This document shows, in pieces, positions 21,616 to 53,778 of a DNA stretch of 64,000 bases. The position numbers and the translations under genes are program-made. Below the pieces are notes generated by a model. That model saw nothing but the letters and a program-made list of their open reading frames with translations, had not been told where the DNA came from and made no database searches. The stretch's first letter is position 1. Each line of letters opens with the position of its first letter. The DNA is taken from positions 115,722 to 179,721 of the forward strand of contig NIVC01002372.1 in NCBI GenBank assembly GCA_002269645.1, given 5' to 3'. This DNA comes from Macrostomum lignano (taxonomy: Eukaryota).

Positions 21616-21717
21616 TTATTTTAGTAAGCTCACGACGCACAGACTATTTTTATTATTTATTTTTTTTTCATTAAATCTCCACTATCTAGGCTAACCCCCC
21701 CCCGAAGGGGGTCCGTA

Positions 21718-21900
21718 CTCCGTAGCCCAGCGGCCTAGCGCATCTGCTCTGGTGTGCAAGCGACCCAGGCTCGATTCCAAGTGCAGTCACATTAATTTGG
21801 GGCTGAATTGGAATCTCGGCTTGGCTCTGCTCGTGCAATTAACGGCCTTGACAGCCAACCCCCCAAGGCGCAGTGAAGTGTACATGCCTAACGATAAATA
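21718..21900 (+). mobile_element. tRNA-derived SINE (family 2)
   Basis: TAGCCCAGCGG A-box and GCTCGATTC B-box-like motifs. Homologous to 7920-8027. Confidence 0.7.
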
Positions 21901-21914
21901 AAGTTAGGGCCGCT

Positions 21915-22070
21915 GTACACTCCTGTGTGAGTGTGTGCCTGCGTACGTATCCGCGCGCTTGTATGCCTGCTCAGGGGAGTCGGCGGAATGGGCAGTAATG
22001 CCTCTCGCCGGTTGTGTGCCTATGTCGCTTAAAGTGCACCAGGGTGCACACAACCAACCCCCTGCCTCTA
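21915..22070 (-). repeat. Unclassified dispersed repeat (family X), copy 2
   Basis: Plus strand gtcggcggaatgggcagtaatgcctctcgccggttg matches copies at 7670 and 56205. Confidence 0.7.
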
Positions 22071-22086
22071 ATAACCCCCCCCCCAA

Positions 22087-22404
22087 GGGAGCCTCGGTTA
22101 GAGCGTCGGACTCACGACTTGAAGTTCGGGGGTTCGATTCCCGGATCACACTTGAAACAATGTGTCCTTGAGCAAGATACTCAATTCTGCATTGCTTCAG
22201 TTCACACAGCTGTAAAAATGGGTGCCAGCATTAGCTGGGGTAATTGAGGGTTTGTGTGGCGACCCCCAGTCCTTAGATGGAACAGCCGTACGCAGCCTTC
22301 AGATGCGCCGCGCAATAGCTGCGGCTGGCTGTCGGCTGCACATCTGGCCCAATAGGGGCAAATCTCTCTCTATCTATCTATCTATCTATCTATTCTTCTA
22401 TCTA
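22087..22404 (+). mobile_element. CORE-type SINE (family 1), copy 3 with (TCTA)n tail
   Basis: tRNA head, CORE-like segment, 3' body and a tctatctatcta tail that directly abuts the Helitron-like array. Confidence 0.8.
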
Positions 22405-24854
22405 TCTTAATACTAAAACTGGTGCGTTGTTTGTCTGTATGTATGTCAGTTCGATAACTCCTCCTAGAATACTTGCAACTCAGCGTTGAAACTTATATGG
22501 GAAAACTGCAAATTTTCCGAGGATGGCTTTAGGCTATTTTAATCTTTCATTTTCAATTTTTAAGATCCCTAAAAAAGCAGAAAATGGCGGTCTTGACCTT
22601 TAATAATCTTAATTGTCCCCTCTTTCTGCTTGGAGCTGAAAATTTGCATCAATTTTAGTGATTGCGCCATAAAATTTTTCTATCTTGGCAGTGTATTTTC
22701 TCTCAAGTGGGGGGATGGTCGCGTTCTCAGTGGCTGCGTGTGTACACTTGAACCCTGGCTCACTGACTGACTTTATAGACAATTGCGCAACTATTTGTGT
22801 TCTGTTTTTTAACAGGAAGCCCTGTGTATTTTTTGCACAGTGAAATTCAGTGCATTTTAATGCATAAACTTGCGAGCATCTTTAGCAGGCAGTGAACGTA
22901 CACTCGATATTTCAATGCTTAAAATCAGAAAGTTTCAAACACTAACTGTTGCTCGAGTTTTGAACTTAGAGAGGAGAGACTTATATTGCTGGAAAGATCT
23001 TGCTGCAATGAGTTCGGGGATATAAGTTTTTTGCTTTAAATATGAAAATTAAATTCACAGCATTCAAGAAAAGATTTTCATACTTTTAGCTTTCTGCAAA
23101 GATTGTGCTCATTTTGGAGTTCAATGGGGGTTCGACCGACCCCCCAATAGTTGGTGGGGGGGAGTTCAATTTCTAGCTGCACTGCGTATTGGAAGGGGGG
23201 TCGGTTGCTGTGTATTTGAGGGTTGATTTAGATTGCGCAATCTTTTTGTTAACTTTAACTGAGGCTGATACTGACTGCCTGAGAAATAAGTTGCGCAATT
23301 TAATTGGTTCAATGTTTTTACGGCGCCTTTCAACACGCAGCTGTCAACCCTAACCCTAACCCTAACCAATGAATTCTGAGAGCTGGGCTATTTGACGTAG
23401 AAATTTCGATTTAGTCCAGTTTCACGGAGAGGATTTCTATTTCGCGGAGAATATTTCGATGGTGTTCAGTTTCACGGAGAGGATTTCGATAGTGTTCAGT
23501 TTCACGGAGACGATTTCTGTTGCGCGGAGAGGTGTTGGAAAATGGGATTCCGCTGATGGAGTTCAGGGAATGGAATTCCGCTGATTGGAGTTCTTCCCCT
23601 TTCTTCTCCGAAGGAGGAGTTGGCCTCGTCTTAATACTAAAGTTGGTGCGTTGTTTGTCTGTGTGTGTGTGTGTTTGTTGGATAACTCCTCCTAGAATAC
23701 TTGCAAGTCAGCGTTGAAACTTATATGGGAAAACTGCAAATTTTCCGAGGATGGCTTTAGGCTATTTTAATCTTTCATTTTCAATTTTTAAGATCCCTAA
23801 AAAAGCAGAAAATGGCGGTCTTGACCTTTGATAATCTTAATTGTCCCCTCTTTCTGCTTGGAGCTGAAAATTTGCATCAATTTTAGTGATTGCGCCATAA
23901 AATTTTTCTATCTTGGCAGTGTATTTTCTCTCAAGTGGGGGGATGGTCGCGTTCTCAGTGGCTGCGTGTGTACACTTGAACCCTGGCTCACTGACTGACT
24001 TTATAGACAATTGCGCAACTATTTGTGTTCTGTTTTTTAACAGGAAGCCCTGTGTATTTTTTGCACAGTGAAATTCAGTGCATTTTAATGCATAAACTTG
24101 CGAGCATCTTTAGCAGGCAGTGAACGTACACTCGATATTTCAATGCTTAAAATCAGAAAGTTTCAACACTAACTGTTGCTCGAGTTTTGAACTTAGAGAG
24201 GAGAGACTTATATTGCTGGAAAGATCTTGCTGCAATGAGTTCGGGGATATAAGTTTTTTGCTTTAAATATGAAAATTAAATTCACAGCATTCAAGAAAAG
24301 ATTTTCATACTTTTAGCTTTCTGCAAAGATTGTGCTCATTTTGGAGTTCAATGGGGGTTCGACCGACCCCCCAATAGTTGGTGGGGGGGGTTCAATTTCT
24401 AGCTGCACTGCGTATTGGAAGGGGGGTCGGTTGCTGTGTATTTGAGGGTTGATTTAGATTGCGCAATCTTTTTGTTAACTTTAACTGAGGCTGATACTGA
24501 CTGCCTGAGAAATAAGTTGCGCAATTTAATTGGTTCAATGTTTTTACGGCGCCTTTCAACACGCAGCTGTCAACCCTAACCCTAACCCTAACCAATGAAT
24601 TCTGAGAGCTGGGCTATTTGACGTAGAAATTTCGATTTAGTCCAGTTTCACGGAGAGGATTTCTATTTCGCGGAGAATATTTCGATGGTGTTCAGTTTCA
24701 CGGAGAGGATTTCGATAGTGTTCAGTTTCACGGAGACGATTTCTGTTGCGCGGAGAGGTGTTGGAAAATGGGATTCCGCTTATGGAGTTCAGGGAATGGA
24801 ATTCCGCTGATTGGAGTTCTTCCCCTTTCTTCTCCGAAGGAGGAGTTGGCCTCG
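22405..24854 (+). mobile_element. Helitron-like subfamily A, two near-identical ~1.22-kb units without GA tract
   Basis: Units 22405-23628 and 23629-24854; 5' tcttaatactaaa, 3' ggaggagttggcctcg. Confidence 0.85.
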
Positions 24855-27800
24855 TATATACTAAAGTTGACGTGTTGTTTGTCTGTATGTCTGTCTGTGT
24901 GTCTGTCATTTCGACAACTCCTCCTTGAATAGTGCCAACTCAGCGTTGAAACTTATATGGGAAGATTGGAAATTATCCGAGGTCGGCTATAGGCTATTTT
25001 AATTCTGAAATTTTAATTTCTAAGATCCTCAAAAAAGCAGAAAACGGCGGTCTTGACCTTTGATAATCTTAATTGTCCCCTCTTTCTGCTTGGAGCTGAA
25101 AATTTGCATGAATTTTTAGTGATTGCGCCACAACTTTTCCCTATCTCTGCAGTGTATTTTCTCTCCAGTGGGGGATGGGGCGTTCTAAATGGCTGCATGT
25201 GTACAATCGGACCCTGGCTCACCGGCTGACTTTATAGACAATTGCGCAAACATTTGTGTTCTAATTTTCAATAGGCAGCCCTGTGATTTTGTTGAACCTT
25301 GAAATTCAATGCATAAACTTGCGGGCCTCTTTAGCAGGCAGTGAACGTACAATTGATATTTCAATGCTTTAAATCAGAAAGTTTCAAACGCAAACTGTTG
25401 CTCGAGTTTTTAACTTTGAGAGAAAAAATTAATATTGCTGGAAAGAACTTGCAAAGCTGATTTCAGGGATATAAATTGTTTGCTTTAAATATGAAAAGAA
25501 AAAGCACAGCATTGAAAAAACTATTTCCATACTTTTAACTTTCTGCAAAAATTGTACTCAGTTTTGCGAGACGTAATAGATAAAGTTGGGGGGAGAGTTC
25601 AACTTCTCACTGCTGCTGTGTATTGGAGGGTTGATTTAGATTGCGCAATGTTTTTCTTAACTTTAACTGAGACTGATACTGACTGACTGAGAAATCGGTT
25701 GCGCAATCAATTGATTCAATTGGTTAAATTTTTTATTTGAACACGCAGCTGTGTGTAGCTTTAACCCTAACCCTAACCCTAACAATAACTCTAACCAATG
25801 AATCCTGATATTTATTTTTTTTGACGGAGAAAATTTCGATTGAGTCCAGTTTAAAAGAGAGAATTTCGATGGTTTTCAGTTTCACGGAAAGAATTTCGAA
25901 GGAGTCCAGTTTCACGGAGAGGATTTCGATGGTTTTCAGTTGCACGGACAGGATTTCTGCTTCGCGGAGAGGATCTTGATGGATTTGGCATCTTCAATCA
26001 GTCAGAGAAAAGAGTAAAGAGAAGAATGAAAGCAGAAGAGAGATGAGATGATAGAAAACAGAGTAGAAATAAGTGGAGATATTAGACATGACAGATTGGA
26101 GAGAAGAGGGGATTTAGGCGGGAACGAAGAGGGAGAGAGAAGAAAAGAGGAGAGAGGAGAGAAAATAGATTAGGGATAAGAGCGTACAGAGAAAATAGAA
26201 GAGAGGGGAGAGTAGAGGAGAAAGAAAGAGTGAGATGAGGGGATGAGGGATGAGAGAGGAGGGAGACAGGAGAGACAAGAAAGGAGAAAAGAGGGGAGAA
26301 AGGAGAAAGGAGAGAGTAGAGACGAAGGACCAGTTAGAAGATATAAATACGGTAGTAGAGATGAGAGGAGAGATAGGAGAGAGAAGCGAGAGAAGAAGCG
26401 AGAGGAGAAGAGAAAGAGGAGAGAGGAGAGAGATGAAATAGATAAGAGAGTTAAGAGAGGAAAAAAGTGAGGAGAGGAGAGATGAGAGATGCGATAAAAA
26501 GAGATGAGTGAGAACATAAGAGAGAAGAGAGAAGAGATTAGAGAAGAGAGGGGAGAAGATAAAAGGAGCAAGGGGAGGAGAAAAGAGAGAATGGAGAGGA
26601 TAGAAAAGAGAGAAGAGAAGAGACAGGGAAAAGTGGAAAGGAGGAAAGAAAGATTGGAGACAAGTAAGTGGAGTGTGAGAGCGTATATGAGATATGAGAA
26701 ATGAGAGCAGAGAGGAAAGAAAAGAGAAGAGAGAGAGGGTTAAGAGAGACGATAGATAAGTGAATAGGGATGACATATAAAAGAGGAGAGAAGAGGGAGA
26801 GATAAGAGAGAAGAGAGAAGACAGGAGACAGAAGTGAAGAGGAGAGATATGAGAGAAGAGAGGAGACAAGAGACAGGAGAGGGTACAGACGAAAGACGAG
26901 GGAGAAAACATAAATAAGGGAGTACGGGTAGAGATGAGATGAGAGAGAGGAGAGAGAAGAGAGTCACGATAATAGCGAAGAGAGGAGAGAGGAGATATGA
27001 GAGATGTGAGAGTCTTTGAGCTATGGTCTTTGAAAGATTTTGTAAAGAATTTGGAGACGATTTGGAAGATGGGATTCAAGACATGGAATTTCAGTTGATG
27101 GATATTTCAGGGAATAGAATTCCGGTGATGGGAGTTCTTCCCCTTTCTCCTCCGAAGGAGGAGTTCCACTCGTCTATATATACTAAAGTTGACGCGTTGT
27201 TTGTCTGTCTGTCTGTGTGTCTGTCTGTCATTTCGACAACTCCTCCTTGAATAGTGGCAACTCAGCGTTGAAACTTATATGGGAAGATTGGAAATTATCC
27301 GAGGTCGGCTATAGGCTATTTTAATTCTGAAATTTTAATTTCTAAGATCCTCAAAAAAGCAGAAAACGGCGGTCTTGACCTTTGATAATCTTAATTGTCC
27401 CCTCTTTCTGCTTGGAGCTGAAAATTTGCATGAATTTCAAGTGATTGCGCCACAACTTTTCCCTATCTCTGCAGTGTATTTTCTCTCCAGTGGGGGGATG
27501 GGGCGTTCTAAATGGCTGCATGTGTACAATCGGACCCTGGCTCACCGGCTGACTTTATAGACAATTGCGCAAAGATTTGTGTTCTAATTTTCAATAGGCA
27601 GCCCTGTGTTTTGTTGAACCTTGAAATTCAATGCATAAACTTGCGGGCCTCTTTAGCAGGCAGTGAACGTACAATTGATATTTCAATGCTTTAAATCAGA
27701 AAGTTTCAAACGCAAACTGTTGCTCGAGTTTTTAACTTCGAGAGAAAAAATTAATATTGCTAGAAAGAACTTGCAAAGCTGATTTCAGGGATATAAATTG

Positions 27801-30800
27801 TTTGCTTTAAATATGAAAAGAAAAAGCACAGCATTGAAAAAACTATTTCCATACTTTTAACTTTCTGCAAAAATCGTACTCAGTTTTGCGAGACGTAATA
27901 GATAAAGTTGGGGGGAGAGTTCAAATTCTCACTGCTGCTGTGTATTGGAGGGTTGATTTAGATTGCGCAATGTTTTTGTTAACTTTAACTGAGACTGATA
28001 CTGACTGACTGAGAAATCGGTTGCGCAATCAATTGATTCAATTGGTTCAATTTTTTATTTGAACACGCAGCTGTGTGTAGCTTTAACCCTAACCCTAACC
28101 CTAACAATAACCCTAACCAATGAATCCTGATATTTATTTTTTTGACGGAGAAAATTTCGATTGAGTCCAGTTTAAAAGAGAGAATTTCGATGGTTTTCAG
28201 TTGCACGGACAGGATTTCTGCTTCGCGGAGAGGATCTTGATGGATTTGGCATCTTCAATCAGTCAGAGAAAAGAGTAAAGAGAAGAATGAAAGCAGAAGA
28301 GAGATGAGATGATAGAAAACAGAGTAGAAATAAGTGGAGATATTAGACATGACAGATTGGAGAGAAGAGGGGATTTAGGCGGGAACGAAGAGGGAGAGAG
28401 TAGAAAAGAGGAGAGAGGAGAGAAAATAGATTAGGGATAAGAGCGTACAGAGAAAATAGAAGAGAGGGGAGAGTAGAGGAGAAAGAAAGAGTGAGATGAG
28501 GGGATGAGGGATGAGAGAGGAGGGGAGACAGGAGAGACAAGAAAGGAGAAAAGAGGGGAGAAAGGAGAAAGGAGAGAGTAGAGACGAAGGACCAGTTAGA
28601 AGATATAAATACGGTAGTAGAGATGAGAGGAGAGATAGGAGAGAGAAGCGAGAGAAGAAGCGAGAGGAGAAGAGAAAGAGGAGAGAGGAGAGAGATGAAA
28701 TAGATAAGAGAGTTAAGAGAGGAAAAAAGTGAGGAGAGGAGAGATGAGAGATGCGATAAAAAGAGATGAGTGAGAACATAAGAGAGAAGAGAGAAGAGAT
28801 TAGAGAAGAGAGGGGAGAAGATAAAAGGAGCAAGGGGAGGAGAAAAGAGAGAATGGAGAGGATAGAAAAGAGAGAAGAGAAGAGACAGGGAAAAGTGGAA
28901 AGGAGGAAAGAAAGATTGGAGACAAGTAAGTGGAGTGTGAGAGCGTATATGAGATATGAGAAATGAGAGCAGAGAGGAAAGAAAAGAGAAGAGAGAGAGG
29001 GTTAAGAGAGACGATAGATAAGTGAATAGGGATGACATATAAAAGAGGAGAGAAGAGGGAGAGATAAGAGAGAAGAGAGAAGACAGGAGACAGAAGTGAA
29101 GAGGAGAGATATGAGAGAAGAGAGGAGACAAGAGACAGGAGAGGGTACAGACGAAAGACGAGGGATAAAACATAAATAAGGGAGTACGGGTAGAGATGAG
29201 ATGAGACAGAGGAGAGAGAAGAGAGTCACGATAATAGCGAATAGAAGAGAGAGGAGATATGAGAGACGTGAGAGTCTTTGAGCTATGGTCTTTCAAAGAT
29301 TTTGTAAAGAATTTGGAGACGATTTGGAAGATGGGATTCAAGTGGAGTTTCAGCTGATGGATTTCAGGGAATGGAATTCCGGTGATGGGAGTTCTTCCCC
29401 TTTCTCCTCCGAAGGAGGAGTTCCACTCTATATACTAAAGTTGACGTGTTGTTTGTCTGTCTGTCTGTCTGTGTGTCTGTCATTTCGACAACTCCTCCTT
29501 GAATAGTGCCAACTCAGCGTTGAAACTTATATGGGAAGATTGGAAATTATCCGAGGTCGGCTATAGGCTATTTTAATTCTGAAATTTTAATTTCTAAGAT
29601 CCTCAAAAAAGCAGAAAACGGCGGTCTTGACCTTTGATAATCTTAATTGTCCCCTCTTTCTGCTTGGAGCTGAAAATTTGCATGAATTTCAAGTGATTGC
29701 GCCACAACTTTTCCCTATCTATGCAGTGTATTTTCTTTCCAGTGGGGGTGGGAGCGTTCTCAGTGGCTGCGTGTGTACACTTGGACCCTGGCTCACTGGC
29801 TGACTGTATAGATAATTGCGCAATGATATGGCTACTGATAAGTTTTCCTGCCTTTCAATGGGCAGTCCTGTGTATTTGTTGGACATTGAAATTTAATGCA
29901 TCAACTTGCAAGCAGGCAGTGAACGTACACTCGATACTTCAATGCTATAAATCAGACAGTTTCAAACGCTAACTGTTCCTCGAGTTTTAAACTTTGAAAG
30001 AAGAGACTTATATTGCTGGAAAGATCTTGCAACGCTGAGTTCGGGGATATAAATTGTTTGCTTTAAATATAAAGACTAAAAGCACAGCATACAAAAACTA
30101 TTTCCATACTTTTAGCTTTCTGCAAAGATTGTACTCATTTTTAGTTCAATGCCCCCAACACCCGGGTTCAATTTCTAACTGCCACTGCGTATTGAAAAGG
30201 GGCCGGTCTCTGTGTACTGGAGGGTTGATTTAAATTGCGCAATCTTTTTGTTCACTTTACCTGAGACTGATACTGACTGACTTTGAAATCGGTTGCGCTA
30301 TCAATTGATTCAATTGGCTCAATTTTTTATTTAAACACGCAGCTGTGTGTAGCTCTAACCCTAACCCTAACCCTAACAATAACCCTAACCAATGAATCCT
30401 AATATTTTATTCTTTTTGACGGAGAAAATTTCGATTGAGTCCAGTTTTAAAGAGATAATTTCGATGGTTTTCAGTTTCACGGAGAGGATTTCTGTTTCGC
30501 GGAGAGGATTTCAATGGTTTTCAGTTTCACGGAGAGGATTTCTGCTTCGCGGAGAGGATCTTGATAGATTTGGCATCTTCAATCAGTCATAAAAGAGAGT
30601 AAAGAGAAGATCGAAAAGAGAAGAGACATGAGATGGTATAAAACAAAGTAGAAATGAGTGGATAGATTAGACATGACCGATGGAAGAGAAGAGGGGAGTA
30701 AGGCGGAAACGAAGAGGGAGAGAGAAGAGAAGAGGAGAGAGGAGAGAAAATAGATTAGGGATAAAAGCGTACAGAGAAAATAGAAGAGAGGGGAGAGTAG

Positions 30801-31859
30801 ATAGCGGAATGGGCGCCCGCGCCTTCCCGCTGTGTCCCCTCCGGGACAGCCCTGCAGCTAAGGGGAGAGTAGAGGAGAAAGAAAGAGTGAGATGAGGGGA
30901 TGAGGGATGAGAGAGGAGAGGAGACAGGAGAGACAAGAAAAGAGAGGAGGGAGAAAGGAGAAAGGAGAGAGTAGAGACGAAGGACCAGTTAGAAGATATA
31001 AATACGGTAGTAGAGATGAGAGGAGAGATAGGAGAGAGAAGCGAGAGAAGAAGCGAGAGGAGAAGAGAAAGAGGAGAGAGGAGAGAGATGAAATAGATAA
31101 GAGAGTTAAGAGAGGAAAGTAGTGAGGAGAGGAGAGATGAGAGATGCGATGATAAGAGATGAGTGAGAACATAAGAGAGAAGAGAGAAGAGATTAGAGAA
31201 GAGAGGGGAGAAGATAAAAGGAGCAAGGGGAGGAGAAAAGAGAGAATGGAGAGGATAGAAAAGAGAGAAGAGAAGAGACAGGGAAAAGTGGAAAGGAGGA
31301 AAGAAAGATTGGAGACAAGTAAGTGGAGTGTGAGAGCGTATATGAGATATGAGAAATGAGAGCAGAGAGGAAAGAAAAGAGAAGAGAGAGAGGGTTAAGA
31401 GAGACGATAGATAAGTGAATAGGGATGACATATAAAAGAGGAGAGAAGAGGGAGAGATAAGAGAGAAGAGAGAAGACAGGAGACAGAAGTGAAGAGGAGA
31501 GATATGAGAGAAGAGAGGAGACAAGAGACAGGAGAGGGTACAGACGAAAGACGAGGGAGAAAACATAAATAAGGGAGTACGGGTAGAGATGAGATGAGAG
31601 AGAGGAGAGAGAAGAGAGTCACGATAATAGCACAGAGTGGAGAGAGTAGATATGAGAGACGTGAGAGTCTTTGAGCTATGGTCTTTGAAAGGTTTTGTAA
31701 AGAATTTGGAGACGATTTGGAAGATAGGGTTCAAGACATGGAATTTCAGTTGATGGATATTTCAGGGAATAGAATTCCGGTGATGGGAGTTCTTCCCCTT
31801 TCTCCTCCGAAGGAGGAGTTCCACTCTATATACTAAAGTTGACGTGTTGTTTGTCTGTC

Positions 31860-31896
<37 letters not shown>

Positions 31897-40800: not shown

Positions 40801-43800
40801 TTCAATCAGTCATAAAAGAGAGTAAAGAGAAGATCGAAAAGAGAAGAGACATGAGATGGTATAAAACAGAGTAGAAATGAGTGGATAGATTAGACATGAC
40901 CGATGGAAGAGAAGAGGGGAGTAAGGCGGAAACGAAGAGGGAGAGAGAAGAGAAGAGGAGAGAGGAGATGAGAGGGGAGATATGAGATAGCAGAGGGAGA
41001 CAAGAGAGATAATAGGAAAGAGAATAGATGACGGATAAGAGCGTACAGAGGAAATAGAAGAGAGGGGAGAGTAGAGGAGAAAGAAAGAGTGAGATGAGGG
41101 AAGAGATATGAGAGAGGAGATATGAGAGACGTGAGAGTCTTTGAGCTATGGTCTTTGAAAGGTTTTGTAAAGAATTTGGAGAGATGATAGGAGAGAGAAT
41201 AGAGATGAGGGATAAGAGCGTACAGGGGAAATAGATGAGAGGGGAGAGTAGAGAAGAAAGAAAGAGTGAGATGAAGGATGAGGATGAGGGAGGAGAGGGG
41301 AGAGAGAAGAGAGGAGAAAAGAGGGGAGAAATGAGACAGGAGAGAGTAGAGACGAAAGACCAGGGAGAAGATATAAATAAGGGAGTAGGGGTAGAGATGA
41401 GAGGAGAGAGAGGAGAGAGAAGAGAGTCACGATAATAGCGAAGAGAGGAGAGAGGAGATATGAGAGACGTGAGAGTCTTTGAGCTATGGTCTTTCAAAAT
41501 TTTGTAAAGAATTTGGAGACGATTTGGAAGATGGGATTCAAGTCATGGAGTTTCAGCTGATGGATTTCAGGGAATGGAGTTCCGGTGATGGGAGTTCTTC
41601 CCCTTTCTCCTCCGAAGGAGGAGTTCCACTCGTATATACTAAAGTTGACGCGTTGTTTGTCTGTCTGTATGTCTGTCTGTATGTCTGTCTGTCATTTCGA
41701 CAACTCCTCCTTGAATAGTGCCAACTCAGCGTTGAAACTTATATGGGAAGATTGGAAATTATCCGAGGTCGGCTATAGGCTATTTTAATTCTGAAATTTT
41801 AATTTCTAAGATCCTCAAAAAAGCAGAAAACGGCGGTCTTGACCTTTGATAATCTTAATTGTCCCCTCTTTCTGCTTGGAGCTGAAAAAATGCACGAATT
41901 TTTAGTGATTGCGCCACAACTTTTCCCTATCTCTGTAGTGTATTTTCTTTCCAGTGGGGGTTGGGAGCGTTCTCAGTGGCTGCGTGTGTACACTTGGACC
42001 CTGGCTCACTGGCTGACTGTATAGATAATTGCGCAATGATATGGCTACTGATAAGTTTTCCTGCCTTTCAATGGGCAGCCCTGTGTATTTGTTGGACATT
42101 GAAATTCAATGCATCAACTTGCAAGCAGGCAGTCAACGTACACTCGATACTTCAATGCAATAAATCAGACAGTTTTAAACGCTAACTGTTCCTCGAGTTT
42201 TAAACTTTGATAGGAGAAACTGATATTGCTGGAAAGATCTTGCAACGCTGAGTTCGGGGATATAAGTTGTTTGCTTTAAATATGAAAAGAAAAAGCACAG
42301 CATTTGAAAAACTATTTCCATACTTTTAACTTGCTGCAAAGATTGTACTCAGTTTTGCGAGACGTAATAGATAAAGCTGGGGGGAGGGTTCAACTTCTCA
42401 CTGCTGCTGTGTATTGGAGGGTTGATTTAGATTGCGCAATGCTTTTGTTAACTTTAACTGAGACTGATACTGACTGACTGTGAAATCGGTTGCGCAATGA
42501 ATTGATTCAATTAGTTCAATCAGTTGTCTTTTAACACGATGCTGTGCGTAGTTCTAACCCTAACCCTAACCCTAACCAATGAATCCGGAGAGTTAAGTTG
42601 TTTGACGGAAAAAATTCGATTAAGTCCAGTTTAGCGGAGACGATTTCAATGTTTTAATTTTGACGGAGAGGATTTCTGTTTCGTGGAGAGGATTTCGATG
42701 GTGTTCAGTTTCACGGAGAGGATTTCGATGGTTTTCAGTTGTACGGACAGGATTTTTCTGCTTCGCGGAGAGGATCTTGATGGATTTGGCATCTTCAATC
42801 AGTCAGAGAAGAGAGTAAAGAGAAGAATGAAAAGAGAAGAGAGATGAGATGATAGAAAACAGAGTAGAAATGAGACGAGAGATTAGACATGACAGATGGG
42901 AGAGAAGAGGGGAGTAAGGCGGGAACGAAGGAGAGAGAAAAGAAGAGGAGAGAGGAGACGAGAGGGGAGATATGAGATAGCAGAGGGTGACAAGAGAGAT
43001 GATAGGAAAGAGAATAGAGATGAGGGATAAGAGCGTACAGAGGTAATAGAAAAGAGGGGAGAGTAGAGGAGAAAGAAGGAGTGAGATGAGGGATGAGAGA
43101 TGAGAGAGGAGGGGAGAGAGAAAAGAGGAGAAAAGAGGGGAGAAATGAGACAGGAGAGAGTAGAGACGAAAGACCAGGTAGAAGATATAAAAAAGGTAGT
43201 ATAGATGAGAGGAGAGAGAGGAGATAGAGAAGCGAGAGGAGAAGAGAGAGAAGAGAGAGGAAAGAGATGAAAGATCAGAGATAAGAGAGTTAGGAGAAGA
43301 AAAGTAGTGAGGAGAGGAGAGATGAGAGATGCGATGAGAAAAGAGATGAGTGAGAACATAAGAGAGAAGAGATTAGAGATTAGAGAAGAGAGGGGAGAAG
43401 ATGAAAGGAGAAAGGAGAGGAGAGAAGAGAGAATGGAGAGGATAGAAAAGAGAGAAGAGAAGAGACAGGGGATAGTGGTAAGGAGGAAAGAAAGATGGGA
43501 GACAAGAAAGTAGAGTGTGAGAGCGTATATGAGATATGAGAAATGAGAAGCAGATAGGAGAGAAAAGAGAAGAGAGAGAGGGTTAAGAGAGACGATAGAT
43601 AAGTAAGGAGAGATGACATATGAGAGAGGAGAGAAGAGGGAGAGATAAGAGAGAAGAGAGGAGACAGGAGACAGAAGTGAAGAGGAGAGATATGAGAGAA
43701 GAGAGGAGACAAGAGACAGGAGAGGGTACAAACGAAAGACGAGGGAGAAGAGATAAATAAGGGAGTAGGGGTAGAGATGAGATGAGAGAGAGGAGAGAGA

Positions 43801-46283
43801 AGAGAGTCACGATAATAGCGAAGAGAGGAGAGAGGAGATACGAGAGACGTAAGAGTCTTTGAGCTATGGTCTTTGAAAGGTTTGTAAAGAATTTGGAGAC
43901 GATTTGGAAGATAGGGTTCAAGACATGGAATTTCAGTTGATGGATATTTCAGGGAATGGAATTCCGGTGATGGGAGTTCTTCCCCTTTCTCCTCCGAAGG
44001 AGGAGTTCCACTTCGTACATATACTAAAGTTCACGTGTTGTTTGTCTGTCTGTCATTTCGACAACTCCTCCTTGAATAGTGCCAACTCAGCGTTGAAACT
44101 TATATGGGAAGATTGGAAATTATCCGAGGTCGGCTATAGGCTATTTTAATTCTGAAATTTTAATTTCTAAGATCCTCAAAAAGCAGAAAACTTGAATCTT
44201 GACCTTTGATAATCTTAATTGTCCCCTCTTTCTGCTTGGAGCTGAAAAATGCATGAATTTTTTGTGATTGCGCCACAACTTTTCCCTATCTCTGTAGTGT
44301 ATTTTCTTTCCAGTGGGGGGTGGAGCGTTCTCAGTGGCTGCGTGTGTACACTTGGACCCTGGCTCACTGGCTGACTGTATAGATAATTGCGCAATGATAT
44401 AGCTACTGATAAGTTTTCCTGCCTTTCAATGGGCAGCCCTGTGTATTTGTTGGACATTGAAATTCAATGCATCAACTTGCAAGCAGGCAGTGAATGTACA
44501 CTCGATACTTCAATGCTATAAATCAGACAGCTTTAAACGCTAACTATTCCTCGAGTTTTAAACTTTGATAGGAGAAACTTATATTGTTGGAAAGATCTTG
44601 CAACGCTGAGTTCGGGGATGTAAGTTGTTTGCTTTAAATATGAAAAGAAAAAGCACAGCATTTAAAAAACTATTTCCATACTTTTAACTTTTTGCAAAAA
44701 TTGTACTCAGTTTTGCGAGACGTAATAGATAAAGTTAGGGGAGGGTTCAACTTCTCACTGCTGCTGTGTATTAGAGGGTTGATTTAGATTGCGCAATGTT
44801 TTTGTTAACTTTAACTGAGACTGATACTGACTGACTGTGAAATCGGTTGCGCAATGAATTGATTCAATTAGTTCAATATTTTTATCAGTGCCTTTTAACA
44901 CGAAGCTGTGTGTAGTTCTAACCCTAACCCTAACCCTAACCCTAGCCAATGAATCCGGAGAGTTGAGTTGTTTGACGGAAAAAAATTCGATTAAGTCCAG
45001 TTTAGCGGAGACGATTTCAATGTTTTAATTTTGACGGAGAGGATTTCTGTTTCGTGGAGATAATTTATGATTAATTTCTGTTTAATGGAGACGATTTTAA
45101 TGGATTTAAGTTTGAAGGAGAGGATTTCGAAGGAGTCCAGTTTCACGGAGAGGATTTCGATGGTTTTCATTTGCACCGACAGGATTTCTGCTTCGCGCAG
45201 AGGATTTTGATGGATTTTGCATCTTCAGTCAGTCAGAGAAGAGAGTAAAGAGAAGAGCGAAAAGAGAAGAGAAATGAGATGATAGAAAAGAGAGTAGAAA
45301 TTAGAGAGGAGAGATGACAGATAGGAGAGAAGAGGGGAGTGATGCGGGAATGAAGAGGGGGACAGAATAGAAGAGGAGAGAGGAGATGAGATGGGAGATA
45401 TGAGATAGCAGAGAGGAGACAAGATGGATGAGAAGAGAGAGAAGAGAGACGGGATAGGAGCGTACAGGGGAAATAGAAGAGAAGAGAGAGTAAAGGAGAA
45501 AGAAAGAATGAGATGAAGGATGAGAGATAAGAGAGGAGGGGAGAGAGAAGAGAGGAGAAAAGAGGGGAGAAAGGAGACAGGAGAGGGTACAGACGACAGA
45601 CCAGGGAGAAGATATAAATAAGGTAGTAGAAATGAGAGGAGAAAGAAGCGAAAGGAGTAGAGAGAGAGGAGAGAGATGAAAGATCAGAGATGAGAGAGTT
45701 AAGAGAGGAAAGTAGTGAGGAGAGGAGAGGAGAGATTAGAGATGCGATGAGAAGAGATGAGTGAGAACATAAGAGAGAAGAGATTAGAGATTAGAGAAGA
45801 AAGGGGAGAAGATGAAAGGAGCAACGAAGGGAGAATATAGAGATAAGATAAGTTGATAGATAAGTGAGTAGAGATGACATATGAGAGAGGAGGGAAGAGG
45901 GAGAGATAAGAGAGAAGAGAGGAGACAGGAGACAGAAGTGAAGAGGAGAGATGAGAGAAGAGAGGAGACAAGAGACAGGAGAAGGTACAGACGAAAGACG
46001 AGGGACAAGAAATAAATAAGGGAGTAGGGATAGAGATGAGATGAGAGAGAGGAGAGAGAAGAGAGAGAAGAGAGTCACGATAATAGCGAAGAGAGGAGAG
46101 AGGAGATATGAGAGACGTGAGAGTCTTTGAGCCATGGTCTTTGAAAAGTTTTGTAAAGAATTTGGAGACGATTTGGAAGATAGGGTTCAAGACATGGAAT
46201 TTCAGTTGATGGATATTACAGGGAATGGAATTCCGGTGATGGGAGTTCTTCCCCTTTCTCCTCCGAAGGAGGAGTTCCACTCG
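24855..46283 (+). mobile_element. Helitron-like subfamily B, nine ~2.0-3.0 kb units with GA-rich tract
   Basis: 5' (tc)tatatactaaagttgacg..(gtct)n..catttcgacaactcctcc and 3' ctcctccgaaggaggagttccactc(g). Shared central modules, (TAACCC)n, 30-bp subrepeats and a polypurine tract. Confidence 0.85.
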
Positions 46284-49200
46284 TCTTATATCTAAAGCTG
46301 AGTGGGTCGATCGACCGGCCGGGTTTAACGCGTATCTCCTCCTAGACGGCTGGCAACTCAAATGCGGGACTTACATATATCAATTCAAAATTTTCCTACG
46401 CAACAAATAGGCTATTTTAATGTTGAAAAATTAAAAGTCAAGTCCGTTAAAAAAGCAAAAAACTGTTTTCTTAACCTTCTTTGGCCACTTTGCCTCTCCA
46501 GTGGCATTATTGTAAAAACAACCACCCCAACCTCCCCCGCAGGTCGCTGTGTATTGGAGGGGTGGTTGATGCGTGTTCTGGGTTCAATGCTAATAAAACC
46601 CCCGCGTGTTGGGGGGTTCAGTTAAATTTAATGCTTCCCTCCAGAACGGAGGGTTGGTTTGGGCTGAGTGTACATAGCAATGTACATTGTAAACAGATAG
46701 ATAGGACTGTGTCGAGATTCAATTGGTTTTACTATCGGCGCCTTTCAAAAGGCAGCCTGTCTGTATATTAGCTGGGCAGTGAAATTCAATGAATAAACAG
46801 CAGGCAGGTGAATGTACACTCGATACTTAACGCTTTGAACCGGGAAGTTCAGACGTTAACTGTTCCTTTTTTTAACTTTGAGAGGAGAGACTTATATTGC
46901 TGGAAGGATCTTGCAACGCTGAATTCGGGGATTTAAGTTATTTGCTTTAAATATGAAAACAAAAAGCACAGCATTGAAAAAACGATTCCATACTTTTAAA
47001 ATTTCTGCCAAGATTGTAGTTGGGGGGGGGGGGTTGAGTACACAAATTCAGGCCAGCTATCATTTGAGTAAATTCAGTAATGGAGGAGGCTGGTAACAAA
47101 TTTCAATTGGTTTGATTATCGGCGCTTTCAGTCCGTCAGATAAGAGAGTAAAGAGAAGAGAGATTTCAAGGAGAAGAGAGGATAGAAAGATGATAGAAAG
47201 ACAGTAGATATGAGAGATAAGAGATTAAAGACGACAGAGCCAGAGGGGAGAGAAGAGGGGAGTGAGGCGGGAATGATGAAGAGGGAGAGCGAAGAGAAGA
47301 GAAAGTAGAGGGAAGAAAGGAGGGGAGAGAGGAAAATGAGAGAGCAAAGGAGGGAGGAAAGATGGGAGGAGAGAGGAGGGATAAGATAGTACAGAGGAGA
47401 GAGAAGAGAGAGGAGAGATGAGACAGGAGACGGTAGAGAGAAGAGGGGAAAGATGAGAGATGAAGAGGGAGAGGGTAAGAGAGAAAATAGGAGTATGAGA
47501 ATTGAGAGCAGAGAGGAGAGACGAGAGAGAAAAAAGAGGAGAGAGAGAGGACAGGGTAGAGGAGAGGCGATAGATAAGCGAGTAGAGATGAGAGATGAGA
47601 GAGAAGAGGAGAGATAGAGAGAATTGAGAGAAGACAGGAGAGAAGAGATAGAGAGAAGAGGGGAGAGAGCGAAGCGAGAAGAGAAGGGAGAGAAGAGAGA
47701 GATGAAAAAACAAATGAGAGAGCAAAAGGGGAAAGATGAGAGAATAGAGATGAGAAAATAGAGATGAGAGCGTAGAGGGGAGAGATGAGAGATGGGAGGT
47801 GATTGATAAGAAAGTAAGAGTAGAGATGAGAGAGGAGATGGAGAGCAGGAAGCAGAAAGAAGAGATTAGATAAAGGAGCAAAGAGGAGAGAGGCGACAGG
47901 AGAGAGTCTCAGTCTGGACGATGGCAGTCAATTTTTGTAAACAGGGAAAACATGCTATGATATTTCAGAGGTTTTATGGAGGATTTGGAAGATTTGGAAG
48001 ATTTTTTGACGTATACCCAGACAAGTAAAAATCATATTTTTATAGACTTCAGTTTCATAGTCTTGATTGACTGAAATTTGATAGAGATAGTATTTTTTTA
48101 AATCGATGGATTGTAGCTTGAAGGAGGATGATACAAGCTAGATTGCAGTTTAACGGAGAGGATTTTGATGATAGCTGTTTCATGGAGAGGATGAAATGGT
48201 TAAATTGAAAGGGAATAGAGAAAAGAGAAAAGGCTAGAGTAGATAAAAGATTAGATGAAAGAGAACATGAAAAGAGAGAATTAAAAGGGACAGATTAGAG
48301 AAAAGAAAAAAAGAGAATACAGGCGAGAGAAGAGATGAAGGAATTGAGAGGAGAGAGGAGAGTGGTAAGAGAGGAGAAAGAGGAGACAGAGGGAGTAGAG
48401 CCAAAAGACGAGAGAGAAGAGATAAATTAGTAGAGATGAGGGGAGAGAGAGGAGAGAGAAGCAAGAGGATAAGGGAGAGAGGAGAGGGGAGAAAGTAGAG
48501 AGATGAGAGAGCAGAGAGGAGATAAAGGAGAGGAGAGAGAAGAGATAAAAGAGGAGAGAGGAAAAAGTTGAGAGGAGAAAGTAGTGAGGAGAGATAAGAG
48601 AGTAGACATGAGAAATGATAGATAAGCGAGGAGATGAGAGCAGAGAGGAGATAGGAGAGATTAGAGATGAGAGAGCAGAGAGGAGATAGGAGAGATTAGA
48701 GATGAGAGAGCAAAGAGGAGAGAGGAGACAGACGAGAGTCTCAGTCTGGACGATGGCAGGCAGTCAATTTTTGCACACAGGTAAAACAACATGGTTTTTG
48801 GGAGGTTAATAGAGGATTTGGAGAGGATTTGGACGATGAGATTCGTGTCATTGGATTCAGCTGATGGATTTCAGGGAATGAAATTCTGGCGATGGGAGTT
48901 CTATCCCCTTACTCCGCCAACGGAGGAGTTGGCCTCGTCTTCTTATATCTAAAGCTGAGTGGATCGATCGACCGGCCGGGTTTAACGCGTATCTCCTCCT
49001 AGACGGCTGGCAACTCAAATGCGGGACTTATATATATCAATCCAGAATTTTCCTACGCAACAAATAGGCTATTTTAATGTTGAAATTTCCAAAATTAAGT
49101 CAGTTAAAAAAGCAGAAAACTGTTTTCTTAACCTTCTTTGGCCACTTTGCCTCTCCAGTGGAGGGGTAGTGGCATAATTGTAAAAACAACCACCCCAACC

Positions 49201-51241
49201 TCCTCCCGCGGGTCGCTGTGTTTTGGAGGGGTGGGTGACGCGTGTTCTGGGTTCAATGCTAATAAAACCCCCGCGTGTTGGGGGTGAAGTAAAATTTAAT
49301 GATTCCCCCCGGCCCGGAATAGGGGGGGTTGGTTTGGGCTGAGTGTACATAGCAATGTACTGTGTAAACAGATAGATAAGGACTGTGTCGAGATTCAATT
49401 GGTTTTATTATCGGCGTCTTTCAAGACTGTGTATTTAGCTGGGCAGCTAATTCAATGAATAAACTTGCGAGCCTCTTACTAGCTAGCAGGCAGTGAATGT
49501 ACACTCGATAGATACTTCAATGCTTTAAATCGGGAAGTTTAAACGCTAACTGTTCCTCGAGTTTTAAGCTTTGAGAGGAGAGAATTTATATTGCTGGAAA
49601 GATCTTGCAACGCTGAGTTTGGGGATATAAGTTATTTGCTTTAAATATGAAAACAAAAAGCACAGCATTGAAAAAACGATTTCCATACTTTTAAACTTTC
49701 TGCCAAGATTGTACTTGGAGGGGGGGTTGCGTACAGAAATTCAAGCCAGCTGTCATTTGAGTAATTTCAGTAATGGAGGAGGCGGGTGACAAATTTCAAT
49801 TGGTTTAATTATATCGGTGCTTTCAGTCCGTCGACGAAAGAGGGGAGAGAAGAGGGGAGTGAGGCAGGAATGATGAAGAGGGAAAGTGAAGAGAAGAGAA
49901 TGTAGAGGGAAGAAAGGAGGGGAGAGGAAAATGAGAGAGCAAAGGAGGGAGGAAAGATGGGAGGAGAGAGGAGGGATAAGAGAGTACAGAGGAGATAGAA
50001 GAGAGAGGAGAGATGAGACAGGAGACGGTAGAGAGGAGAGGGGAAAGATGAGAGAATAGAGATGAGAAAATAGAGAGCGCAGAGAGGAGAGATGAGAGAT
50101 AGGAGGTGATTGATAAGAAAGTAAGAGTAGAGAGGAGAGAGAAGATGAGAGCAGAGAGAAGAGATTAGATAAAGGAGCAAAGAGGAGAGAGGAGACAGGA
50201 GAGAGTCTCAGTCTGGACGATGGCAGTCAATTTTTGCAAACAGGGAAAACATGCTATGATATATCAGAGGTTTTATGGAGGATTTTTTAAATTTTTTGAC
50301 GTATACCTAGACAAGTAAAAAGCATATTTTTATAGACTTCAGTTTCATAGTCTTGAGTGACTGAAATTTGATAGAGATAATATTTTTTAAATTGATGGAT
50401 TGTAGCTTGAAGGAGATGATACACGCTGGATTGCATTTAACGAAAATGATTTTGATGATATCTGTTTCATGGAGAGGATGAAATGGCTAAATGAAAGGGA
50501 ATAGAGAAAAGAGAAAAGGAAAGAGTAGATAAATAATTAGATGAAAGAGAACATGAAAAGAGAGAATCAAAAGGGACAAATTAAAGAAAAGAAAAAGAGA
50601 ATAAAGGCGAGAGAAGAGATGAGGGAATTGAGAGGAGAGAGGAGAAGGGGTAAGAGAGGAGAAAGAGGAGACAGGAGGGAGTAGAGCCAAAAGACGAGAG
50701 AGAAGAGATAAATGAGTAGAGATGAGGGGAGAGAGAGGAGAGAGAAGCGAGAGGATAAGGGAGAAAGGAGAGGGGAGAAAGTGGAGAGATGAGAGAGCAG
50801 AGAGGAGATAAAGGAGAGGAGAGAGAAGAGATAAAAGAGGAGAGAGGAAAAAGTAGAGAGGAGAAAGTAGTGAGGAGAAAGAAGAGAGTAGATATGAGAG
50901 CGCAGAAAGGAGAGATAAGAGAGTAGAGATGAGAGATGAGAGATGAGATGAGAAATGATTGATAAACGAGCAGATGAGAGCAGAGAGGAGATAGGAGAGA
51001 TTAGAGATGAGAGAGCAAAGAGGAGAGAGGGACAGACGAGAGTCTCAGTCTGGACAATGGCAGGCAGTCAATTTTTGCTAACAGGTAAAACAACATGGTT
51101 TTTGGGAGGTTAATAGAGGATTTGGAGAGGATTTGGACGATGGGATTCGTGTCATTGGATTTAGCTGATGGATTTCAGGGAATGAAATTCTGGCGATGGG
51201 AGTTCTATCCCCTTACTCCGCCAACGGAGGAGTTGGCCTCG
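46284..51241 (+). mobile_element. Helitron-like subfamily C, two more diverged units with doubled GA tract
   Basis: Units 46284-48937 and 48938-51241; 5' tcttatatctaaagctgagtgg, 3' actccgccaacggaggagttggcctcg. Confidence 0.8.
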
Positions 51242-51360
51242 TATTATTATTATTATTATTATTATTAATTTTAATATTATTATAATAGTAATTATTATTA
51301 GTAGCTAGCTTTATTGTTGTAGTTAATATTATTATTATTATTATTATTTTATTTTATTAG
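51242..51360. repeat. (ATT)n-rich microsatellite flanking the array
   Basis: tattattattatt runs immediately after the terminal CTCG. Confidence 0.9.
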
Positions 51361-53718: not shown

Positions 53719-53778
53719 CTCATAATTTCATTTAACCTAATCATCAGGTGCGTTGAGCGTCCGGACAGCACGTAGATC

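What the first reader, a model, noticed from the sequence alone, without database searches (positions are those of the whole stretch)
22405..51241. 29-kb head-to-tail concatemer of non-autonomous Helitron-like elements
Thirteen units are joined 3' end to 5' start with no spacer or TSD, and the whole block sits in a single A|T site. The junction CTCG|TC is what a circular rolling-circle intermediate would contain. Tandem Helitrons are known from plants and Drosophila. This locus shows a transposon turning into a 1.2-3 kb-monomer macrosatellite, with CTCG instead of the canonical CTRR end.
Basis: partly seen in the sequence, partly recalled or inferred. Interest (0 to 1): 0.85.

Follow-up and report, generated by a model that had tools for sequence, protein, structure and literature searches.

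The report
Tandem Helitron-like transposon array, flatworm
One copy of a Macrostomum lignano (flatworm) locus carries a 28.9-kb block of 13 head-to-tail copies of a non-coding, Helitron-like rolling-circle transposon that is cleanly absent from a sister copy of the locus; this is a well-documented example of a structure already known from bats, silkworm, flies and plants, not a new kind of element.

Summary
The array is real. The window is M. lignano contig NIVC01002372.1. It holds 13 direct units of 1.2-3.0 kb, each ending in ...GGAGGAGTT(GGC/CCA)CTCG and starting with TC(T)TATA..CTAAAG. A roughly 99%-identical sister copy of the locus (NIVC01000222.1) has an exact empty site, ...GGGGCAAA|T(ATT)8. 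So the whole block lies between one A and one T, has no target-site duplication, starts with TC and ends with CTCG. These are canonical Helitron hallmarks except for the last tetranucleotide.

The block starts at 22363, not 22405, because the (TC)n(TATC)n leader is part of the insertion. Only 5 of 12 internal junctions read CTCG|TC; the others lack 4-5 nt.

The units fall into three subfamilies and are mostly 85-97% identical, whereas the flanks differ from the empty copy by about 1%. A fresh rolling-circle concatemer of a single circle is therefore excluded. Most likely a pre-formed, heterogeneous array moved as one composite Helitron and then gained a few local duplications (98-99.8% pairs).

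No autonomous RepHel partner or dispersed solo copy could be reached with these tools. Tandem Helitron arrays are already known, so this is a new member of a known kind, of moderate interest.

The parts
22363..51241 (+). Whole inserted block (28,879 bp): 42-nt leader plus 13 head-to-tail units. It is flanked by host A (22362) and host T (51242), has no TSD, starts with TC and ends with CTCG.
   Evidence: The empty site in L002 (NIVC01000222.1) reads ...CCCAATAGGGGCAAA|T(ATT)8AATTTT. The window has the same flanks around 22363-51241.
22363..22404 (+). 5' leader TCTCTCTC(TATC)n...TATCTA. This pyrimidine microsatellite is absent from the empty site, so it is part of the insertion. It is probably a slippage expansion of the TCT(A/T) 5' terminus.
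22405..24854 (+). Units U1 (22405-23628) and U2 (23629-24854). Subfamily A, 1.2 kb, without the GA-rich module. They are 99.2% identical to each other (substitutions only).
24855..46283 (+). Units U3-U11, subfamily B. Boundaries: 24855, 27173, 29429, 31827, 33957, 36932, 39651, 41633, 44016, ending at 46283. Lengths are 2.0-3.0 kb. Modules in order: 5' terminus, (TGTC)n, CTCCTCCTTGAA box, about 0.8 kb of unique sequence, (CCCTAA)3, 30-bp minisatellite, GA-rich tract of 0.3-1.1 kb, 3' terminus. U6-U8 carry an internal partial duplication of about 0.5 kb. The 5' part of U7 is C-like.
46284..51241 (+). Units U12 (46284-48937) and U13 (48938-51241). Subfamily C, with 5' terminus TCT(TCT)TATATCTAAAGCTGAG and no (CCCTAA)n. 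The last 88 nt are 84% identical to subfamily A.
27147..27163 (+). Representative 3' palindrome of subfamily B, CTCCTCC-GAA-GGAGGAG (17 nt), 9 nt upstream of the unit end ...TTCCACTCG.
   Evidence: dG -6.3 kcal/mol, z = -1.67, 7 of 200 shuffles fold as well. The same motif occurs in U3-U11.
51216..51229 (+). 3' hairpin of the outermost unit (subfamily C), CTCCG-CCAA-CGGAG, 12 nt upstream of the block end ...GAGTTGGCCTCG.
   Evidence: dG -5.2 to -5.8 kcal/mol, z = -1.69.
22096..22362 (+). Host target context: the 3' part of a tRNA-derived SINE-like repeat. The block sits exactly between the SINE body (...GGGGCAAA) and its T(ATT)8 tail (51242-51266).
   Evidence: One search shows homology to 1541-1689 and 12081-12222. 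One search gives an Rfam tRNA hit at 12065-12135. One search shows the intact body plus tail in L002.

Best explanation
The block is a tandem array of non-autonomous Helitron-type (rolling-circle) transposons in Macrostomum lignano.

Shown:
- Thirteen complete units are joined 3' end to 5' end.
- The block is present in one copy of the locus and exactly absent from a roughly 99%-identical sister copy.
- It lies between a host A and T, has no target-site duplication and no terminal inverted repeats, starts with 5'-TC and ends with CTCG.
- A short palindrome lies 9-12 nt upstream of the 3' end.

Inferred mechanism (about 0.5 probability, given that it is a Helitron array). The array already existed elsewhere as a heterogeneous tandem of related elements. 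It was copied to this site as one composite Helitron. A RepHel transposase supplied in trans nicked at the outermost 5' TC and unwound the plus strand. It ran through the 12 internal 3' ends, which have weak 5-7 bp hairpins and a non-canonical CTCG, and terminated at the last one. The strand was pasted into the A|T at the tail of a SINE.

After arrival, unequal exchange added a few units. Candidates are U1/U2, U3/U4 and the 2.8-kb U4-5/U8-9 segment, all 98-99.8% identical. Slippage expanded the TC/TATC leader.

The array has no coding capacity. It acts as a mobile seed of a 1.2-3 kb macrosatellite.
For: Array structure and termini.

Empty site: L002 18971|18972 reads ...GGGGCAAA|T(ATT)8, against window 22362|22363...51241|51242, with (ATT)8 identical on both. 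There is no TSD beyond one ambiguous T.

No TIRs: read directly from the sequence.

Palindrome near the 3' end.

No protein, Rfam or tRNA content in the array.

Definition of canonical Helitrons (5' TC, 3' CTRR, a 16-20 nt palindrome about 11 bp from the end, A|T target, no TSD): PMC4067079.

Support for en-bloc arrival:
- Substitution identity of the flanks to the empty copy is 99.2% (left, 938 bp) and 98.2% (right, 709 bp), with a background of 98.5-99.5%.
- Unit 5' regions are 85-95% identical for most pairs, and junction-centred segments 84-97%.
- Only three pairs or segments reach 98% or more.
- Read-through of Helitron 3' ends occurs in about 12% of Helraiser events, and in 36% or more without the hairpin. 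Alternative ends such as CTTG are used (PMC4778049).
Against: - The 3' tetranucleotide CTCG violates CTRR.
- The hairpins are short and not statistically compelling on their own (z about -1.7). In subfamily A the stem has a mismatch and is not the predicted fold.
- Seven of 12 internal junctions lack the 5' TC, and three lack the 3' G.
- No RepHel gene, solo copy or donor array could be examined, because no tool reaches the rest of this genome by DNA.
- En-bloc transposition needs 12 successive terminator bypasses.
- The three copies of the locus are mosaics of each other. Gene conversion could therefore have homogenised the flanks and made the insertion look younger than it is.
Confidence: 0.75

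Rival explanations
1. In-situ accretion. Separate elements of the three subfamilies inserted one after another at this locus. Each used the A|T that every Helitron regenerates at its own 5' boundary (host A plus the T of TC). Unequal crossing-over multiplied the units over a long period. The empty sister copy then reflects an old presence/absence polymorphism with homogenised flanks, or a precise loss.
For: The 5' boundary A|TC is a valid Helitron target, read directly from the sequence. Helitrons lying directly next to one another are reported in bat and maize (PMC4067079). Age shows a left-to-right polarity, as expected if new units enter at the 5' edge: A pair 99.2%, B units 90-99.8%, C pair 88-91%. 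The locus copies are mosaics, so gene conversion does occur here.
Against: All 13 units have one orientation, although A|T is symmetric. The flanks right up to the breakpoints are only 0.8-1.8% diverged from the empty copy, while units differ by 3-15%. Ten or more same-site insertions within that time, or a perfectly precise 28.9-kb loss, would be needed.
Confidence: 0.2
2. One circular Helitron intermediate was replicated by a rolling circle into a multimer, and the concatemer integrated here.
For: Helraiser makes circles with a precise 3'-end/5'-TC junction (PMC4778049). Five junctions read CTCG|TC.
Against: A concatemer of one circle would be homogeneous at birth. Here there are three subfamilies, most pairs are 85-97% identical, there are four junction types, and unit lengths range from 1.2 to 3.0 kb. 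The flanks are only about 1% diverged from the empty site.
Confidence: 0.04
3. Not a Helitron. A complex satellite was amplified as extrachromosomal circles and re-inserted at a break by end joining, or was integrated by a tyrosine-recombinase (Crypton-like) route.
For: There is no TSD, and only a 1-nt overlap (T) at the junctions. The 3' end is non-canonical and the hairpin weak. No transposase has been identified.
Against: The block holds an integer number of units, with both outer ends in the phase of the internal junctions. It starts with 5' TC next to a host A, and its 3' end abuts a host T. There is a palindrome 9-12 nt from the end. The termini are conserved between subfamilies whose interiors are 65-80% identical.
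Confidence: 0.04
4. Assembly artefact. The array, or its unit count, was produced by mis-joining PacBio reads from dispersed copies.
For: The assembly is a Canu PacBio draft of a highly repetitive, partly triplicated genome (PMC5730564). Segments of 2.8 kb at 99.6% identity could be collapsed or expanded. The contig ends in a satellite 12.7 kb downstream.
Against: Both flanks continue colinearly with the sister contig exactly at the block ends. The units are individually distinguishable, most pairs being below 97% identical.
Confidence: 0.03

Closest known systems
Canonical (Helitron1-type) non-autonomous Helitrons
   Same: 5' TC. Insertion between A and T. No TSD and no TIRs. A roughly 17-nt palindrome about 10 nt upstream of the 3' end. 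An AT-rich target. Non-coding derivatives whose termini are conserved and whose interiors vary.
   Different: The 3' end is CTCG rather than CTRR. It resembles the CTTG variant used by maize Helitrons and by Helraiser (PMC4778049). The hairpin is only 5-7 bp. The autonomous partner is unknown.
Tandem Helitron arrays of Myotis lucifugus, Bombyx mori and maize, and rolling-circle-amplified centromeric Helitron arrays of plants (Xiong, Dooner & Du 2016, as summarised in PMC12628747, PMC4067079 and PMC5876387)
   Same: Head-to-tail Helitron copies with direct 3'-5' junctions, attributed to bypass of the termination signal. A transposon becoming a long-monomer tandem repeat.
   Different: The plant arrays mostly consist of truncated units, with many 5' ends and a single 3' end. 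Here every unit keeps both ends, three diverged subfamilies are mixed, and an empty paralogous site shows the whole array as one insertion.
Helentron / HINE / DINE-1 elements and their satellites (DINE-TR1 in Drosophila virilis; Cg170-bearing elements in Crassostrea gigas)
   Same: A microsatellite close to the 5' end, central tandem repeats, a short 3' stem-loop, and a 10-11 nt complement between a 5' subterminal box (AACTCCTCCTT) and the 3' hairpin arm. Helentron-derived repeats often turn into satellites.
   Different: Helentrons insert into TT and carry terminal T runs (PMC4067079). The empty site here is AAAT|ATT, so only A|T or T|A is possible. The 5' box lies 50-86 nt inside the element, not at its terminus.
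IS91-family bacterial rolling-circle insertion sequences
   Same: No TSD. One-ended transposition or terminator bypass can carry adjacent DNA and produce multimers.
   Different: IS91 elements are prokaryotic, with different end sequences and a tetranucleotide target. The resemblance is mechanistic only.

Membership tests
Canonical Helitron | 5' terminus TC | tested here: met
   The block starts TCTCTC... at 22363, next to host A. Five of 12 internal unit starts are TC. The other seven lack it.
Canonical Helitron | 3' terminus CTRR | tested here: not met
   The outer end and 8 of 12 internal ends are CTCG. Three are CTC(T) and one is CTTCG. The third position is a pyrimidine, as in the CTTG variant reported for maize and Helraiser (PMC4778049).
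Canonical Helitron | 16-20 nt palindrome about 11 nt upstream of the 3' end | tested here: inconclusive
   Subfamily B has a 17-nt palindrome 9 nt from the end (dG -6.3, z -1.67). Subfamily C has a 5-bp stem 12 nt from the end. In subfamily A the stem has one mismatch and is not the minimum-energy fold.
Canonical Helitron | Insertion between A and T without target-site duplication | tested here: met
   The empty site in NIVC01000222.1 is GGGGCAAA|TATTATT. The filled site is GGGGCAAA[TC...CTCG]TATTATT.
Canonical Helitron | No terminal inverted repeats | tested here: met
   The 5' 30 nt and the reverse complement of the 3' 30 nt share nothing. There is only a 10-11 nt subterminal complement.
Canonical Helitron | Mobilised by a Rep/helicase (RepHel) protein; an autonomous element with the same termini exists in the genome | not testable with these tools
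   There is no RepHel in the window's long ORFs outside the array. The GenBank annotation excluded transcripts overlapping repeats (PMC5730564). No tool searches this genome by DNA.
Canonical Helitron | Dispersed copies with the same boundaries | not testable with these tools
   There are none in the window flanks, and the 5'-terminus motif is absent from L003. L002 shows no match to the array in BLAST against the window. The metagenome scan for the 3' end found nothing.
Helentron / HINE | Insertion within a TT dinucleotide, with T runs at the element boundaries | tested here: not met
   The empty site AAAT|ATT has no TT at the breakpoint.
Helentron / HINE | Subterminal inverted repeats of 11 bp or more, plus a 3' stem-loop | tested here: inconclusive
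   AACTCCTCCTT (50-86 nt from the 5' end) is complementary to AAGGAGGAGTT in the 3' hairpin arm in subfamilies A and B. Only 7 nt match in subfamily C.
Tandem Helitron array (termination-bypass type) | Direct 3'-end to 5'-end junctions without intervening host DNA, all in one orientation | tested here: met
   There are 12 junctions with no spacer, all on the + strand.

The most novel reading that the evidence does not exclude
A complete tandem array of about 20-29 kb, made of ten or more already-diverged Helitron units from three subfamilies, transposed as a single composite element into a new A|T site. It did so by running through a dozen weak internal terminators. On this reading, Helitron arrays are themselves mobile and can seed ready-made macrosatellites at new loci in a recently duplicated flatworm genome where the family may still be active.
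Probability: 0.4. Interest if true: 0.55.

Novelty: new member of a known kind. Interest (0 to 1): 0.4.

Why it matters
Helitrons have not been described in Macrostomum lignano, a transgenic regeneration model whose genome is more than half repeats, 15% of it simple and tandem (PMC5730564). This locus gives a clean filled-versus-empty pair for a whole Helitron array. That is direct evidence that such arrays arrive, or leave, as units bounded by one 5' TC and one 3' end. It offers a tractable case for testing terminator read-through, the CTYG class of 3' ends, and how transposons seed long-monomer satellites. It does not change the current picture of Helitron biology.

Tried and rejected
1. Coding capacity. 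ORFs in the units are low-complexity reverse-strand artefacts of the GA-rich tract. The 349-aa ORF has no homologue among 5.8 billion proteins.

2. Structured RNA or tRNA cargo. There is none in the array.

3. Helentron/HINE classification. Considered because of the 5' microsatellite, the central repeats and an 11-nt subterminal complement. Rejected because the empty site has no TT.

4. Shared imprecise junction types as proof of block duplication. Rejected, because junction type does not track the similarity of the surrounding sequence. For example, J3 (CTCG|TC...) and J4 (CTC|TA...) are 97.9% alike. The 4-5 nt losses in the TCTA/TA run look recurrent.

5. Compensatory change in the 3' hairpin between subfamilies. 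Only the left arm and loop differ and the pairing register shifts, so this is not true covariation.

6. Third locus copy (NIVC01002449.1). The fetched stretch ends about 240 bp short of the site, so its state is unknown.

7. Literature on Helitrons or satellites in Macrostomum. Nothing relevant was found.

8. Metagenome scan for the 3' terminus. No hits.

9. A RepHel search with a made-up consensus probe was not run. The GenBank annotation of this genome excluded repeat-overlapping transcripts, so a costly search was unlikely to reach the partner element.
Full report
**Source of the window.** The RING-finger gene at 13253-14569 is annotated only on NCBI assembly GCA_002269645.1, contig NIVC01002372.1, which is 179,721 bp long. 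That accession is the Mlig_3_7 assembly of the flatworm Macrostomum lignano, line DV1. It is a Canu assembly of 130x PacBio reads polished with Illumina data (PMC5730564). From the offsets, the window corresponds to about 115,722-179,721 of the contig, so the window ends at the contig end.

**The observation.**
- Self-BLAST of the window shows a dense set of direct matches, and no inverted ones, from 22405 to 51250.
- The plus strand there is strongly purine-rich, with GC skew of 0.2-0.54.
- Searching for the proposed termini finds the 3' motif GAAGGAGGAGTT(GGC/CCA)CTCG, or a close variant, 13 times, each followed at once by a 5' motif.
- This gives 13 units: U1 22405-23628, U2 -24854, U3 -27172, U4 -29428, U5 -31826, U6 -33956, U7 -36931, U8 -39650, U9 -41632, U10 -44015, U11 -46283, U12 -48937, U13 -51241. 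Lengths are 1.2-3.0 kb.
- No copy of the unit lies elsewhere in the window.
- The units have no credible coding capacity and no Rfam or tRNA matches.

**Anatomy of a unit.** The modules occur in this order:
- a 5' terminus TC(TA)nTAC-TAAAGTTGACG;
- a (TGTC)n/(TG)n microsatellite;
- a conserved box AACTCCTCCTTGAATAG;
- about 0.8 kb of unique sequence;
- (CCCTAA)3, which is the telomere repeat and is present in U1-U11 only;
- 4-7 copies of a 30-bp minisatellite (TTTCACGGAGAGGATTTCGATGGTGTTCAG);
- a GA-rich tract of 0.3-1.1 kb, absent from U1-U2;
- about 90 nt of conserved 3' sequence ending in a short palindrome and ...CTCG.

There are three subfamilies. A is U1-2. B is U3-11. C is U12-13, with a different 5' terminus, TCTTATATCTAAAGCTGAG. 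The first 130 nt of U7 are B-like and the next 600 nt C-like. U6-U8 carry an internal partial duplication of about 0.5 kb.

**The decisive result: an empty site.** The neighbouring RING gene has two 90%-cluster siblings in the same assembly. One lies on NIVC01000222.1 (locus L002), which is colinear with the window on both sides of the array. L002 18044-18996 matches window 21425-22394, and L002 18972-19679 matches window 51242-51950.

Read base by base:
- L002 has ...CATCTGGCCCAATAGGGGCAAA|T(ATT)8AATTTTAAT.
- The window has the same left sequence up to A22362, then TCTCTCTCTATC...GGAGTTGGCCTCG (22363-51241), then T(ATT)8AATTTTAAT.

From this:
- The entire block is one presence/absence difference.
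- It lies between an A and a T. There is one ambiguous T, so T|A cannot be excluded, but TT can.
- It has no target-site duplication.
- It starts with TC and ends with CTCG.
- The target is the junction between the body and the (ATT)n tail of a tRNA-derived SINE-like repeat.

**Helitron features.** Canonical Helitrons are defined by 5' TC, 3' CTRR, a 16-20 nt palindrome about 11 bp from the 3' end, insertion between A and T, and no TSD (PMC4067079).
- Met here: TC, A|T, no TSD, and no TIRs.
- Partly met: the palindrome. Subfamily B has CTCCTCC-GAA-GGAGGAG 9 nt from the end (dG -6.3 kcal/mol, z -1.67). Subfamily C has a 5-bp stem. Subfamily A has a mismatch.
- Not met: CTRR. The end is CTCG. 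This is comparable to the CTTG ends used by maize Helitrons and by Helraiser when it picks alternative terminators (PMC4778049).
- Helentron/HINE membership is excluded by the target, which has no TT. The 5' microsatellite, the central repeats and an 11-nt complement between the 5' box and the 3' hairpin arm do recall DINE-1-like elements (PMC4067079).

**Junctions.** Only J1, J3, J7, J11 and J12 read CTCG|TC. J2, J6 and J9 read CTCG|TATATAC. J4, J5 and J8 read CTC|TATATAC. J10 reads CTTCG|TACATATAC. The last three types can be derived from CTCG|TCTATATATAC by 4-5 nt losses in the TCTA/TA run. Junction type does not follow the similarity of the surrounding sequence, so these losses look recurrent.

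**Age structure.**
- Substitution identity between the window and the empty copy is 99.2% in the 938 bp left of the site and 98.2% in the 709 bp right of it. It is 98.5-99.5% over 15 kb further out.
- The unique 5' regions of the units are 85-95% identical for most pairs. Only U1/U2 (99.2%), U3/U4 (98.1%) and U5/U9 (99.8%) are close.
- Junction-centred 450-nt segments are 84-97.9% identical, apart from J4/J8 at 99.8%.
- A 2.8-kb segment spanning U4-5 is 99.6% identical to one spanning U8-9.
- On a rough clock, only those few duplications can be younger than the filled/empty split. Roughly ten unit lineages are older.

**What this means for mechanism.**
It is contradicted.
- The most economical reading is that a heterogeneous array already existed elsewhere and was copied here as a single composite Helitron.
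- The RepHel would have started at the outermost TC and passed 12 internal 3' ends. Read-through of an intact Helraiser end occurs in about 12% of events, and in 36% or more when the hairpin is removed (PMC4778049). The hairpins here are weak.
- The strand was then inserted into the A|T, followed by a few local duplications and slippage of the leader.
- I give this about 0.5, conditional on the Helitron reading.

**The main rival (about 0.2 overall).** Stepwise accretion at the locus through the A|TC target that each Helitron regenerates at its 5' boundary, plus unequal exchange.
- For it: the left-to-right age polarity (A pair 99.2%, C pair 88-91%), and reports of Helitrons abutting one another in bat and maize (PMC4067079).
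- Against it: it needs ten or more same-orientation insertions at one dinucleotide within about 1% divergence. Otherwise it needs homogenised flanks or a perfectly precise loss in the sister copy.
- The three locus copies are indeed mosaics of each other, so flank homogenisation cannot be dismissed.

**Other rivals.**
- Re-insertion of satellite circles by end joining, or a Crypton-like route, does not explain the integer number of units or the TC/A|T/palindrome combination.
- An assembly artefact is unlikely, because both flanks continue colinearly with the sister contig exactly at the block ends and most units are distinguishable. The exact unit count still needs read support.

**What could not be done.** No tool reaches the rest of the M. 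lignano genome by nucleotide search. The GenBank annotation excluded repeat-overlapping transcripts (PMC5730564). So dispersed solo copies, a donor array and the autonomous RepHel partner remain untested. The third locus copy (NIVC01002449.1) was fetched, but the stretch ends about 240 bp short of the site. A metagenome scan for the 3' end found nothing. The literature has nothing on Helitrons in this species.

**Comparison and novelty.** Head-to-tail Helitron junctions and tandem Helitron arrays are documented in Myotis, Bombyx, maize and many other plants. Helitron/Helentron-derived satellites are documented in Drosophila and oysters. These arrays are generally attributed to bypass of the terminator or to rolling-circle amplification (PMC4067079, PMC5876387, PMC12628747). 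This locus is a new member of that kind.

Its particular merits are:
- full-length units of three subfamilies in one array;
- a CTCG end;
- a clean empty site showing that the whole array behaves as one insertion;
- occurrence in a flatworm model where the family is undescribed.

Interest is moderate (0.4).

Noticed in passing
window 22096-22362 plus 51242-51266; also 1541-1689 and 12081-12222: There are copies of a tRNA-derived SINE-like repeat (Rfam tRNA hit at 12065-12135, 29.1 bits). The Helitron block is inserted exactly between the body of one copy and its (ATT)8 tail. The copy at 12081-12222 is truncated in the window relative to L002 and L003.
   Followed up: partly
window 1-22362 and 51242-54669 versus L002 (NIVC01000222.1) and L003 (NIVC01002449.1): The locus (ALDH2-like gene, two RING genes, C-type lectin) is present three times in the assembly at about 98-99.5% identity. 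The pattern of shared variants is mosaic: L003 agrees with L002 in some stretches and with the window in others. This suggests recombination or gene conversion between homeologues or haplotypes of this partly triplicated genome.
   Followed up: partly
window 14730-14931 and 15119-15331: Two arrays of a 15-bp repeat (CCGGACATTTGCCCT, about 13-14 copies each) lie in inverted orientation about 190 bp apart. Together they form a large palindromic minisatellite just downstream of the RING gene.
   Followed up: no
window 62967-63964 (contig end): A satellite with a period of about 28 bp (88-93% identity between copies) runs to within 36 bp of the end of the window, which is also the end of the contig. 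The assembly probably broke in this satellite. L003 carries an unrelated 28-bp satellite (TTCACAGACATGGGTTGGTCCTCACA, at least 1.2 kb, L003 16500-17710; the stretch read starts inside it) that the window lacks.
   Followed up: no
window 19778-20125: A 12-bp repeat (GGTGCTGTTGAG, 29 copies) lies inside an ORF (19731-20165) encoding (LLRV/MLLR)n. Its length differs between the locus copies.
   Followed up: no
window 51951-52871: A stretch of about 920 bp is present in the window and absent from L002. The breakpoint is ...CTGCAGTAGCC|TGCGCAACGC, and the insert ends ...GGCTGC. It has no Helitron-like ends. It is another young indel or TE insertion 0.7 kb from the array.
   Followed up: partly
window 20996-21425 versus L002 17868-18044 and L003 19100-20820: The intron-poor gene upstream of the array has a possible paralogous first exon at 53873-54280, judged by eye from a shared KDFHLDQ...PDLY motif; no alignment was run. 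This gene is rearranged or partly deleted differently in the window and in L002, compared with the longer version in L003. It is not among the called genes and has no Pfam hit for the downstream paralogue.
   Followed up: no
window 17149-17565 (-): A remnant of a DDE_3 (Tc1/IS630-like) transposase ORF (Pfam E = 3e-4, below the gathering score).
   Followed up: partly
window 10698-11681 (-) and 13253-14569 (+): Two single-exon genes encoding a RING finger plus coiled coil lie in divergent orientation. The second has no homologues outside M. lignano in a search of 5.8 billion proteins.
   Followed up: partly
each of U1-U11, e.g. window 23348-23365, 25765-25782, 44922-44939: Every A- and B-type unit carries exactly (CCCTAA)3, the C-strand of the TTAGGG telomere repeat, just upstream of the 30-bp minisatellite. 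The C-type units lack it. Its significance is unknown; it could be captured telomeric sequence or a protein-binding site.
   Followed up: partly
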